Below, piece by piece: positions 17,372 to 19,639 of a stretch of DNA of 64,000 bases. This DNA comes from Ascoidea asiatica JCM 7603 (lineage: Eukaryota; Fungi; Ascomycota): NCBI GenBank assembly GCA_001600695.1, contig BCKQ01000004.1, positions 541,583 through 605,582 on the forward strand, in the 5' to 3' direction. The notes beneath the pieces were generated by a model that saw only the letters and a list, made by a program, of their open reading frames with translations, did not search any database and was not told where the DNA came from. How positions within the stretch are numbered: position 1 is the stretch's first letter; the number at the start of each line of letters is the position of its first letter. A program made the translations under genes and the position numbers.

Positions 17372-17983
17372 ATGGCAAAATTAACAAAATATCATATAAA
17401 TCCATTTCCAAAATCTGCAATTAAAAAAACTGAAGCAAATTATAAATTATCAATAATTCAACAACCAAAACAAGCTAGAGCTTCTGGAACTACAAAACAA
17501 TTCTTTGGTAGAAGATCAATTGATCCATTTCCAATATTATCTGTATCTCTTGATAAAAATGGTGAAGATATTATTGATCATTCATATAATTTTTTAGTTT
17601 GTGTTGCTACAATTGAATCAACTACTTTTCAATCCAATATTAATGATAATCATAATGACAATATACATAATATACATAATATAAACAATATAAATAATAT
17701 AAATAATATAAGTAATATAAGTAATATGAATATGATAAATAACATAGACAATATAAACAATATAAACAATATAAACAATATAAATAATATAAATAATATA
17801 AATGATATTGATAAATCAAGAAAACAAAAAAGAAGAAGAATTTCAAATAAAGATAGAAAACCAGATAATATTCTATTTGGTACTTCTTTTGTATCTGCCA
17901 ATATCATCACTCCAAGTCATATTTCAAATTCAAATTCAAATGACACCAAATCTTTCTTAAATATATATAACAACAACAACAAC

Positions 17984-18016
<33 letters not shown>

Positions 18017-18753
18017 GATTCAAATAAATTAAAAGCTTTTTTTGTATTCAATGATTTATCAATTAGATTAGAAGGTAAATATAAATTAATTTTTAATTTA
18101 TATGAATTTCCATTATCAATTTCAAATAATTTTAAAAATTTAAATTTATCAAAATTATATTTTAGAGATTCTATAAAAAGTAATGAAATTATTGTTTATA
18201 ATGCAAAAGATTTTCCTGGTTTACAACCTTCACCGGCTTTAACTCAAAAATTAAAAAATTTAGGTTCAAGAATTCGTGTTAGAAAAATTTCTTCAAAAAA
18301 AAAATTATATTCATCATCTATTGAAAATGATAATACCAATGATAATATTAATGATAATATTAATGATAATATCAATGAGAATGAGATTGAGAACGAGAAT
18401 GAGATTAATAATAATAATGAAATTGTGAATGAAAAGAATACAGATAATAACAAAAAAAGAAAAAATAGTGATGATAATGATAATGATAATGATAATGATA
18501 ATGATAATGATAATAGTAATAATAGTAATAAGGAAGATGAAAATAATCAAGATTCTTCAAAATTAAAATTTTTATCAGATATTTCATCAAATTTAAAACC
18601 AATTCAATTAAATCAATTAGTTTCAAATGATTTAAATAATTCAATTCCTTTAAATTTACAAAATTCAAATTTACAAAATTCAAATTTACAAAATCAAAAT
18701 TTCATACAAAATTTTAATAATCATCAAATTTTATTAAATTCATATAATTTACC

Positions 18754-18784
<31 letters not shown>

Positions 18785-19639
18785 TCTAATAATAATTCTA
18801 ATAGTAATCCTAATAGTAATTCAAATAATAATTCAAATAATAATGGAGATAATATTAATCAATTACAAAGATTTTATAATTCATATCCAATTTCAGGAAA
18901 TTATATACCAACAAATTTAATTCAAAATCAAATTAATAATCATTTAAATTTAAATCATTTACAAAATCAATTTAATTCAAATAATCAATTTAATAATCAA
19001 ATTCCATTAAATTCATTACCAATTAATTCAATTCCATTAAATAATAATTTAAATAATAATTTAAATAATAATTTAAATAATAATTTAAATAATAATTTAA
19101 ATAATAATTTAAATTCAACAAGTGATGATCAAAGATTTGCAGAAAAAGCAATTGAAATTGAAAATGATTTAGATTTAAATAGTCAAATTGATCGTCAAAT
19201 TGAAGAACATGTTGAGAAAGTTAAAGCAGCAGCAGCCGCCGCAGCAGCAATTGCAGCGTCTGATAATAATAATTACAATAATGACAATAATGATAATAAT
19301 GATAATAATGATAATAATACCACTACTATTGCAGATACAAATACAAATACGAATATTAATGAATCTATAAATATTGATGATATTGATTTGAAAGAAGTTA
19401 ATGATGTTTTAAATGAAGAAAATATTAAAGATTCAAATTTAGATCCATCACTTAAAAAACAATCAATTAATGAATCTAATGAATTGAATGAATCAAATAA
19501 TGATGAATTAAAAGAATCAAATGAGAATAAATCAGAAACTCGATTAGAAACTGAATTAGGATCTCAAGTGGAATCTCAATTGGAATCTCAAGAAGATAAT
19601 AATATCAATTCTGAGAATTTGAATTCAAATATTAACTAA
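17372..19639 (+). CDS. Velvet-domain transcription factor, VeA-like; likely start ATG 17372 rather than TTG 17162
   Basis: YKLSIIQQPKQARASG..RRSIDPFPI, FVFNDLSIRLEGKYKLIFNLYE and VYNAKDFPGLQPSPALTQKLKNLGSRIRVRK are velvet-domain blocks. Confidence 0.9.

What the first reader, a model, noticed from the sequence alone, without database searches (positions are those of the whole stretch)
17372..19639. VeA-type velvet regulator in a budding-yeast genome
Seen: all velvet blocks are present (QQPKQARASG, RRSIDPFP, FNDLSIRLEGKYKLIFNLYE, NAKDFPGL, GSRIRVRK) at about 17441-18286, embedded among ordinary Saccharomycotina genes. Known: velvet proteins (VeA/VelB/VosA, with LaeA) control development and secondary metabolism in filamentous fungi and are absent from S. 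cerevisiae and C. albicans, although some early-branching yeasts retain them. Inference: the EGKY.L.F.LYE and NAK.FPGL signatures are closest to VeA. This could be a retained or reduced velvet circuit controlling hyphal growth or sporulation in a yeast, possibly without its usual partners.
Basis: partly seen in the sequence, partly recalled or inferred. Interest (0 to 1): 0.8.

Follow-up and report, generated by a model that had tools for sequence, protein, structure and literature searches.

The report
VeA-like velvet regulator in Ascoidea yeast
This is a real, intact gene for a velvet-family (NF-kB-like) transcription factor of the VeA type in a filamentous budding yeast, but it is one of at least 13 velvet genes in that genome and such genes were already catalogued in this yeast order, so it is a sound annotation rather than a discovery.

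Summary
The ORF at 17372-19639 (+) encodes 755 aa. Residues 24-305 match Pfam Velvet end to end (123.9 bits, E 1.4e-35). An AlphaFold model matches only the solved VosA, VelB and VeA velvet domains. The arginines needed for DNA binding (R36, R47, R48) and the two dimerisation residues (G170, L290) are kept.

The VeA-type call is moderately supported:
- The best PDB hit is VeA.
- Maximum-likelihood trees place the protein with other yeast velvets on the VeA side of a 92/95 branch.
- Loop A is VeA-length, and the FPGL and EGxY..(Y/F)E signatures are VeA-like.
- Against this, an AU test does not reject a VosA grouping (p 0.069), and clade-profile scores are ambiguous.

The idea of a reduced circuit without partners is wrong. 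The genome is 20.3 Mb in 71 contigs, most likely Ascoidea asiatica. It has at least 13 velvet loci, six of them VelB-type.

Novelty is low. A 2024 survey already defines a Saccharomycotina VeA clade. A 2016 paper reports 12 velvet genes in Saccharomycopsis fibuligera, and the closest relatives are already annotated as velvet proteins. Expression and a LaeA partner could not be settled.

The parts
17372..19639 (+). Complete ORF of the velvet gene: 755 codons plus a TAA stop, with no CTG codon and 28% Asn
   Evidence: the start is confirmed by alignment to relatives' N-termini
17441..18286 (+). Velvet domain (aa 24-305), split by low-complexity inserts
   Evidence: Pfam PF11754, 123.9 bits, E 1.4e-35, profile 1-235/237. 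The AlphaFold core has pLDDT above 90, and Foldseek hits only VosA, VelB and VeA velvet structures.
17459..17533 (+). N-terminal DNA-binding region with loop A (aa 30-54, QQPKQARASGTTKQFFGRRSIDPFP). R36, R47 and R48 correspond to VelB R71, R80 and R81. The loop is 14 residues long, as in VeA-type proteins.
   Evidence: alignments; loop lengths per clade; residue roles from PMC13389560 and PMC3876986
17630..17812 (+). First Asn-rich insert in the variable region (aa 87-147). It is predicted disordered and is absent from Saccharomycopsis, Babjeviella and Pezizomycotina relatives.
17813..17860 (+). Basic patch KSRKQKRRRISNKDRK (aa 148-163), NLS-like. It is shared with L009, L008 and with Saccharomycopsis and Babjeviella relatives, and is absent from Pezizomycotina VeA.
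   Evidence: alignment A1; the NLS function is inferred only
17918..18016 (+). Second Ser/Asn-rich insert ending in a poly-Asn run (about aa 183-215), with low model confidence
18032..18286 (+). C-terminal dimerisation region (aa 221-305) with FFVFNDLSIRLEGKYKLIFNLYE, NAKDFPGL, L290 and GSRIRVRK. Its partner strand ILFGTSF with G170 lies at nt 17870-17890.
   Evidence: invariant or nearly invariant columns G170, G235, F281, G283, L290 and G298. G170 and L290 correspond to VelB G240 and L331 (PMC12077163; alignment).
18287..19636 (+). C-terminal tail of 450 aa, rich in Asn, Asp and Gln, with no recognisable domain
   Evidence: Pfam finds nothing besides Velvet; composition

Best explanation
The gene encodes a VeA-type member of the fungal velvet family of NF-kB-like transcription factors. 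It lies in a filamentous budding yeast of the order Ascoideales, most likely Ascoidea asiatica NRRL Y-17576.

Shown here:
- The velvet domain is full length and is predicted to fold like the solved VosA, VelB and VeA domains.
- The arginine cluster required for DNA binding (R36, R47, R48) is kept.
- The glycine and leucine required for velvet dimerisation (G170, L290) are kept.
- The same genome carries at least 12 further velvet loci, six of them VelB-type.

Inferred:
- The protein enters the nucleus, using loop A and/or the clade-specific basic patch at aa 148-163.
- It binds DNA through loop A as a homodimer or as a heterodimer with one of the VelB-type paralogues.
- It regulates developmental programmes such as hyphal growth, conidiation or ascus and spore formation.
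- The Asn-rich inserts sit in the naturally variable connector of the domain. They are low-complexity expansions typical of this 22% GC genome, not new functional modules.

The gene arose by duplication within a Saccharomycotina VeA-type lineage. Its closest paralogue is L009, at 50% identity. L012 is a degenerate copy.
For: - Domain: Pfam Velvet scores 123.9 bits over the whole profile.
- Fold: the only significant Foldseek PDB hits are 4n6q, 4n6r and 9i2s, with TM by target 0.67-0.76. The model core has pLDDT above 90.
- PDB sequence search: VeA 50.7 bits, VosA 39.6, VelB 26.7.
- Careful ML tree under LG+C20: ours, L009 and L012 group at 100/97. They are sister to Saccharomycopsis proteins, inside an 18-row yeast clade (97/88). 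That clade joins Lipomyces and Trichomonascus velvets (97/91). All of these plus Pezizomycotina VeA are separated from VosA, VelC and VelB by a 92/95 branch.
- A second tree without long rows, on 207 columns, has the same topology, and the key branch has SH-aLRT 93.
- Clade anchors: P0022 scores 229 bits to VeA, P0137 scores 173 bits to VosA, and P0163 is named Ryp3/VelB.
- Loop A length is 14 in ours, against 15 in VeA, 12-13 in VosA and 12 in VelB and VelC.
- FPGL and EGxY..(Y/F)E are shared with VeA.
- Partners: L001-L006 score 175-227 bits on a VelB profile and below 150 on the others. The genome-wide scan finds 13 velvet loci.
- Organism: the nearest proteins are from S. crataegensis, A. 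rubescens and Babjeviella. The genome's 71 contigs equal the 71 records of the A. asiatica assembly named in PMC6041473.
Against: - The AU test does not reject a tree joining the yeast clade with VosA (delta lnL 8.9, p 0.069).
- Clade-profile scores for this protein are ambiguous: VeA 105, broad VosA set 127, VelC 116.
- The trees are unrooted. The yeast group plus VeA is a clade only if the root lies on the VosA/VelB/VelC side.
- No RNA run holds the locus, so expression is unproven.
- No LaeA-like partner was identified.
- Two of the four basic loop-A residues mutated in VosA (K37, K39) are not basic at the aligned positions, although a lysine lies next to them.
- No velvet protein of any budding yeast was found to have been functionally studied in the held literature. 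The proposed biological role is extrapolated from filamentous fungi.
Confidence: 0.75

Rival explanations
1. It is a functional velvet regulator but not a VeA orthologue. It would belong either to the VosA lineage or to a yeast-specific velvet clade that split off before the VeA/VosA/VelB/VelC divergence. Under this reading the VeA-like signatures are retained ancestral states or convergent.
For: The AU test does not reject grouping with VosA (p 0.069). The clade-profile score is highest for the broad VosA set, 127 against 105 for VeA. FastTree placed the yeast clade at the centre of the tree rather than next to VeA. Foldseek ranks VosA first by a small margin. The trees are unrooted.
Against: Both IQ-TREE analyses put a well-supported branch (92/95, then SH-aLRT 93) between VosA/VelC/VelB and the group of VeA plus yeast clades. 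The arrangement of Pezizomycotina VeA against Saccharomycotina matches the species tree. The loop-A indel and the FPGL signature are shared with VeA and not with VosA. The best pairwise PDB hit is VeA. The published survey names a Sac-VeA clade (PMC10845976).
Confidence: 0.2
2. It is a decaying or functionless paralogue in an expanded family. It would be kept open by chance or only recently released from selection, with the Asn-rich inserts disrupting the fold.
For: The domain carries about 95 extra low-complexity residues. Sister paralogues show decay: L012 lacks the arginine cluster and the FPGL and RIRVRK blocks, and L009 has lost one arginine and shortened loop A. There is no expression evidence.
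Against: A 755-codon open frame has a chance of about 1e-32 in this composition. All five functionally tested residues are conserved. The inserts lie in the connector that naturally varies from 0 to more than 400 aa (PMC12077163). The model core is confident. It is the best-conserved member of its three-gene subgroup.
Confidence: 0.04
3. The window is not from a yeast, or the gene is a recent horizontal import from a filamentous fungus.
For: Only that the base composition (22% GC) and the Asn runs also resemble other AT-rich eukaryotes.
Against: The gene has the same composition as its surroundings (19% against 22% GC). The neighbours are intron-poor yeast-type genes. Its closest relatives are Saccharomycopsis and Babjeviella proteins, not Pezizomycotina. 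Paralogues are spread over several contigs.
Confidence: 0.01

Closest known systems
VeA of Aspergillus nidulans (velvet complex VelB-VeA-LaeA; velvet domain structure PDB 9i2s)
   Same: Both have an N-terminal velvet domain followed by a long disordered C-terminal tail. VeA is the best PDB sequence hit. Loop A is long (14 against 15 residues) with K...RR at the same positions. The FPGL and EGxY..(Y/F)E signatures are shared, and the dimerisation Gly and Leu are conserved. VelB-type partners are present in the genome.
   Different: Identity is only about 29-32% over the domain. Two Asn-rich inserts and a basic patch lie in the connector. The tail has no recognisable similarity to the VeA C-terminus that binds LaeA. 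No LaeA was identified. The gene is one of about four VeA-type paralogues rather than a single gene. Light control and secondary-metabolism roles are untested.
Velvet-domain proteins of Saccharomycopsis crataegensis (GMM33504.1, GMM33872.1, GMM33873.1) and Babjeviella inositovora (ODQ78863.1)
   Same: These are the closest relatives in 1.84 billion representatives (49-55% and 41% identity over matched stretches). They share loop A (STKSFAGRR-type), the basic patch and the FPGL, GSRIRVRK and N-terminal MAK.. motifs. They belong to the same yeast clade in the trees.
   Different: They lack the Asn-rich inserts and are shorter (407-568 aa). They are annotated only as hypothetical or velvet domain-containing, and none was found to be characterised.
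'Sac-VeA' clade of the 2024 velvet phylogenomics survey (PMC10845976) and the 12-gene velvet family of Saccharomycopsis fibuligera (PMC5106798)
   Same: The same kind of gene in the same subphylum or order. The survey reports that VeA and VelB types dominate in Saccharomycotina, as seen here. The family size is comparable (12 against at least 13).
   Different: Whether this exact gene or species was included in those surveys could not be checked. Ascoidea is not mentioned in the text or the held supplements.
VosA and VelB of A. nidulans (PDB 4n6q, 4n6r)
   Same: The same fold and the same DNA-binding arginine cluster. Like VelB, this protein has a disordered insert inside the velvet domain.
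   Different: Their loop A is shorter, and they carry FPGM or FPGV instead of FPGL. The VelB profile scores only 56 bits. The insert here is a lineage-specific Asn run, not the conserved VelB IDD.

Membership tests
Velvet family (Pfam PF11754) | Sequence match to the family profile above the curated threshold, over the whole domain | tested here: met
   123.9 bits against a cut-off of 25, E 1.4e-35, profile 1-235/237. There are 1111 relatives at E<=1e-3 in the representative library.
Velvet family (Pfam PF11754) | Twisted beta-sandwich fold like VosA, VelB and VeA (NF-kB Rel-N-like) | tested here: met
   The AlphaFold2 model has mean pLDDT 73.8, with 115 residues at 90 or above. Foldseek PDB gives seven hits at E<=1e-3, all of them velvet domains, with TM by target 0.67-0.76. 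This rests on a prediction, not a solved structure.
Velvet family (Pfam PF11754) | Conserved arginine cluster of the DNA-binding region (VelB R71, R80, R81) | tested here: met
   R36, R47 and R48 align to these positions. Their role is taken from PMC13389560.
Velvet family (Pfam PF11754) | Dimerisation-critical glycine and leucine (VelB G240, L331) | tested here: met
   G170 is invariant in 63 sequences and L290 is at least 90% conserved. The positions were mapped through the VelB alignment. Their role is taken from PMC12077163.
Velvet family (Pfam PF11754) | Actual DNA binding and homo- or heterodimer formation | not testable with these tools
   Needs EMSA or ChIP, and two-hybrid or pull-down assays.
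VeA subfamily | Phylogenetic placement with experimentally anchored VeA rather than VosA, VelB or VelC | tested here: inconclusive
   ML trees put it on the VeA side of a 92/95 (SH-aLRT 93) branch. However, the AU test for the VosA alternative gives p 0.069, profile scores are ambiguous and the trees are unrooted.
VeA subfamily | Long loop A between the QxPxxAR and DPxP motifs | tested here: met
   Ours has 14 residues. VeA has 15 in 68 of 71 sequences and basal Saccharomycotina have 14 in 8 of 8. VosA has 12-13, and VelC and VelB have 12. I derived this character from the data here; it is not a published definition.
VeA subfamily | Signature residues EGxY..(Y/F)E and FPGL | tested here: met
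   VeA has FPGL in 65 of 66 and Y in 66 of 66 sequences. Ours and its kin have FPGL in 8 of 8. VosA has FPGM in 13 of 15, and VelB has FPGV.
VeA subfamily | N-terminal velvet domain with a long C-terminal extension | tested here: met
   The domain spans aa 24-305 of 755. VosA shares this architecture, so it excludes only VelC.
VeA subfamily | C-terminal region that binds the methyltransferase LaeA, and a LaeA gene in the genome | tested here: inconclusive
   The tail has no recognisable domain. The PF13489 scan gave 17 methyltransferase hits. By my reading the eight best are housekeeping enzymes or generic small methyltransferases. No LaeA reference sequence was available for a reciprocal test.
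VeA subfamily | A VelB-type partner present | tested here: met
   Six VelB-type genes, L001-L006. L002 is 55% identical to an A. rubescens velvet protein. Physical interaction was not tested.

The most novel reading that the evidence does not exclude
Ascoideales yeasts may run an expanded velvet network of about 12-13 genes, with several VeA-type and six VelB-type paralogues, that works without LaeA and has been rewired to control yeast-hypha growth or ascus development. Within the trio L007, L009 and L012, this gene would be the DNA-binding member. The degenerate copies, which have lost the arginine cluster and/or the C-terminal dimerisation block, would act as non-DNA-binding modulators. The clade-specific basic patch in the connector would be a new nuclear-import or DNA-contact element.
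Probability: 0.2. Interest if true: 0.5.

Novelty: new member of a known kind. Interest (0 to 1): 0.3.

Why it matters
The gene confirms that at least one order of budding yeasts keeps, and has multiplied, the velvet regulators that govern development in filamentous fungi. A 2026 review (PMC13006574) still states that these regulators are absent from Saccharomycotina. In the held literature I found no functional study of a velvet protein from a budding yeast. Ascoidea and Saccharomycopsis could therefore show what velvet dimers do in an organism that may lack LaeA and, according to that review, secondary-metabolite clusters. The presence, the VeA-like clade and the family expansion in this order are already published, so this locus adds a well-annotated member rather than a new idea.

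Tried and rejected
- The word-index protein search with aa 1-320 was swamped by low-complexity words and returned no hit. With aa 216-310 it found 99 candidates and none was significant. The genome's own proteins appear to be withheld from that collection, so these blanks mean nothing.
- The exact-sequence contig look-up of the neighbouring Get3 gene was blank for the same reason.
- Cluster names gave organisms but no VeA, VelB, VosA or VelC labels. I anchored the clades through the PDB chains instead. VelC has no solved structure, so its label rests on the C-terminal domain position and is tentative.
- Clade-specific HMM scoring separated VelB-type paralogues cleanly but could not assign this protein.
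- The fold comparison does not discriminate subfamilies.
- The sequencing-run search found only DNA holders, three runs in two studies and no RNA, so I laid no reads and expression stays untested.
- LaeA: a Methyltransf_23 scan and inspection of the best eight loci found no convincing candidate. Without a reference LaeA sequence this is not evidence of absence.
- The count of about 30 velvet genes in an earlier scan note was not reproduced. The Pfam scan finds 13 loci and my own profile finds 12 of the same ones. Both counts are lower bounds.
- I considered and rejected a non-yeast origin such as Dictyostelium or Neocallimastigomycota, which the 22% GC and Asn runs first suggested. The neighbours and nearest relatives rule it out.

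Full report
**Observation.** The window is very AT-rich, with 14.5-33% GC per 2-kb window and a mean near 22%. It is packed with long intron-free ORFs. The ORF at 17372-19639 on the plus strand runs from ATG to TAA and encodes 755 aa. The score is 123.9 bits against a curated cut-off of 25, E 1.4e-35, covering profile positions 1-235 of 237. In this base composition an open frame of 755 codons has a chance of about 1e-32. The start codon is confirmed because the N-terminus (MAKLTKY..P..SIKK) aligns with the N-termini of the closest relatives.

**Host.** Neighbouring ORFs carry Rrn11, Tom37, cytochrome b5 plus FMN-dehydrogenase (cytochrome b2 type), ArsA/Get3, a TLC/Lag1 domain, Apc2, an ammonium transporter, carnitine acetyltransferase and WDR3/Dip2 domains. 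This is an ordinary intron-poor yeast gene set.
- The window is contig 4, positions 541583-605582, of a 20.3-Mb assembly in 71 contigs.
- The nearest named proteins to this gene come from Saccharomycopsis crataegensis and Babjeviella inositovora.
- The nearest to a paralogue is Ascoidea rubescens, at 55% identity.
- The A. asiatica NRRL Y-17576 assembly is listed as 71 records, BCKQ01000001-71, in PMC6041473.

The contig count and the nearest relatives support that, but I could not prove the species. "Budding-yeast genome" is correct in the taxonomic sense. By general knowledge, not tested here, Ascoidea grows as a filamentous yeast.

- The DNA-binding region is aa 30-54.
- The connector holds an Asn-rich insert (aa 87-147), a basic patch KSRKQKRRRISNKDRK (aa 148-163), the conserved strand ILFGTSF with G170, and a second Ser/Asn-rich insert ending in a poly-Asn run (about aa 183-215).
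- The dimerisation blocks are aa 221-246 and 262-305.
- Alignment with relatives shows that the two Asn-rich inserts are confined to this genome (ours and paralogue L009). The basic patch is shared with Saccharomycopsis and Babjeviella proteins and is absent from Pezizomycotina proteins.
- The survey of 4,999 velvet domains says the connector varies from 0 to more than 400 aa, so the inserts are within the known range.
- An AlphaFold2 model built on a 63-sequence alignment has a confident core (115 residues at pLDDT 90 or above) and disordered inserts.
- Foldseek against the PDB gives seven significant hits, all velvet domains: VosA 4n6q, VelB and VosA 4n6r, and VeA 9i2s. TM by target is 0.67-0.76. 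The next hits are at E 0.05 and weaker, several of them Rel-family (NFAT) domains.

**Functional residues.** Three arginines of VelB (R71, R80, R81) are indispensable for function (PMC13389560). Mapping through the printed VelB alignment and the alignments, they correspond to R36, R47 and R48 here, and all three are conserved. VelB G240 and L331 are required for dimerisation and are also needed in VeA and VosA (PMC12077163). They correspond to G170 (invariant in 63 sequences) and L290 (at least 90% conserved). Of the four loop-A basic residues mutated in VosA (K37, K39, R41, K42; PMC3876986), the R41 and K42 positions are RR here. K37 and K39 align to T and Q, with a lysine between them. This is the same K...RR pattern as in VeA.

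**Which subfamily.** A full HMMER search of 1.84 billion representatives found 1111 relatives at E<=1e-3. The top hits are yeast proteins, followed by about 570-aa Pezizomycotina proteins. I anchored clades with solved structures:
- P0022 (Thielaviopsis) scores 229 bits to VeA against 81 and 74 to VelB and VosA.
- P0137 scores 173 bits to VosA.
- P0163 is named Ryp3, which is VelB.
- P0134 has a C-terminal domain and is probably VelC.

This protein itself scores VeA 50.7, VosA 39.6 and VelB 26.7 bits.

A careful IQ-TREE analysis (LG+C20, 64 rows, 334 columns) gives the following:
- Ours, L009 and L012 group at 100/97 and are sister to S. crataegensis-type proteins.
- They lie inside an 18-row yeast clade (97/88).
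- That clade joins the Lipomyces and Trichomonascus group (97/91).
- A 92/95 branch separates VosA, VelC and VelB from Pezizomycotina VeA plus all these yeast proteins.

Removing four long rows and keeping 207 well-filled columns gave the same topology, with SH-aLRT 93 on that branch (quick search only). The arrangement of Pezizomycotina VeA against Saccharomycotina mirrors the species tree.

Two further characters agree with the VeA type. Loop A has 14 residues here and in basal Saccharomycotina and 15 in 68 of 71 VeA, against 12-13 in VosA and 12 in VelC and VelB. FPGL and EGxY..(Y/F)E are near-universal in VeA and in the yeast clade, while VosA has FPGM and VelB has FPGV.

Three results weaken the call. 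The AU test does not reject joining the yeast proteins with VosA (delta lnL 8.9, p 0.069). Profile scores for this protein are ambiguous. The trees are unrooted. I put the VeA-type call at about 0.75-0.8.

**Not a lone or reduced circuit.** Scanning the whole genome with the Pfam model gives 13 loci, 10 of them strong. My own yeast-VeA profile recovers 12 of the same loci and nothing new.
- L001-L006 are clearly VelB-type: 175-227 bits on the VelB profile, nested in the VelB clade.
- L008 heads a second yeast VeA-type subclade.
- L009 is the closest paralogue, at 50% identity.
- L012 is a 313-aa degenerate copy without the arginine cluster or the FPGL and RIRVRK blocks.
- L010, L011 and L013 are divergent.

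Candidate dimer partners are therefore abundant. LaeA remains open. A Methyltransf_23 scan found 17 methyltransferase loci. By my reading, the eight best are Coq3-, Erg6-, Oms1-, CFA-synthase-, NDUFAF5- and METTL2-like enzymes or generic small methyltransferases. Without a reference LaeA sequence this does not show absence.

**What is already known.**
- PMC10845976 (2024) reports velvet genes in part of the Saccharomycotina genomes. [quoted passage not shown]
- PMC5106798 (2016) reports a velvet family of 12 genes in Saccharomycopsis fibuligera and remarks on the expansion.
- NCBI and UniProt already label the relatives in A. rubescens, S. crataegensis, Babjeviella, Wickerhamomyces, Cyberlindnera, Lipomyces and Trichomonascus as velvet proteins.
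- A 2026 review (PMC13006574) still says velvet proteins and LaeA are absent from Saccharomycotina. The point is therefore not universally absorbed.
- I found no functional study of a budding-yeast velvet protein in the held library.

**Mechanism.**
- Shown: an intact velvet fold with the DNA-binding and dimerisation residues, and co-occurring VelB-type paralogues.
- Inferred: nuclear import, DNA binding through loop A as a homo- or heterodimer, and control of developmental genes.
- Untested: expression (no RNA runs hold the locus), partners, targets and any LaeA link.

**Verdict.** This is a correct and careful annotation of a VeA-type velvet gene. It is ordinary for its order, so it is a new member of a known kind with low to moderate interest.

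Noticed in passing
G000 contig 4: L005 (C4:419639-420424), L001 (C4:457814-458587), L002 (C4:487383-488147) and this gene (C4:559023-559868, window 17441-18286): Four of the 13 velvet loci lie within 140 kb of one contig: three VelB-type genes and this VeA-type gene. My rough scan-statistic estimate gives p of about 1e-3 for such clustering. The VelB-type copies are not each other's closest relatives in the tree, so the linkage is old rather than a recent tandem duplication.
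   Followed up: partly
L012:1102-2043 (-), which is G000:C3 about 574.3-574.8 kb: A 313-aa degenerate paralogue of this gene, with the identical ANYKLSIIQQP start of the domain. It has lost the loop-A arginines and the FPGL and RIRVRK blocks but keeps an open frame. It could be a decaying copy or a non-DNA-binding modulator.
   Followed up: partly
L009:1423-3645 (+), which is G000:C8:407267-408622: The closest paralogue (50% identity, 741 aa) has an even longer Asn-rich connector of about 250 aa. Its loop A is shortened to 9 residues, with one of the two adjacent arginines lost.
   Followed up: partly
P0002 and P0043 (Saccharomycopsis crataegensis DASC09_011970 and DASC09_011980): Two VeA-type velvet genes carry consecutive locus tags on one contig, so they are probably tandem neighbours in Saccharomycopsis.
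   Followed up: no
L005:1411-2316 (+): The open frame of this VelB-type gene covers the start of the velvet domain, but the first in-frame ATG falls inside the conserved RMCG motif. A short upstream exon or a non-ATG start is likely.
   Followed up: no
window 17372-19639: There is no CTG codon among the 755 codons of the gene. This is compatible with the strong CUG avoidance expected in a species with ambiguous CUG decoding (PMC6041473), but it is also expected from 19% GC.
   Followed up: no
Literature: PMC13006574 against PMC10845976 and PMC5106798: A 2026 review states that velvet proteins and LaeA are absent from Saccharomycotina. This contradicts the 2024 survey, the 2016 S. fibuligera genome paper and the data here.
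   Followed up: yes
L021:1084-2107 (-), G000:C11 about 303.5 kb: A small class-I methyltransferase appears to be split by a short intron between an N-terminal exon (75-aa ORF) and the SAM-binding body (244-aa ORF). It is not obviously a housekeeping enzyme, and its N-terminus does not look LaeA-like to me.
   Followed up: partly
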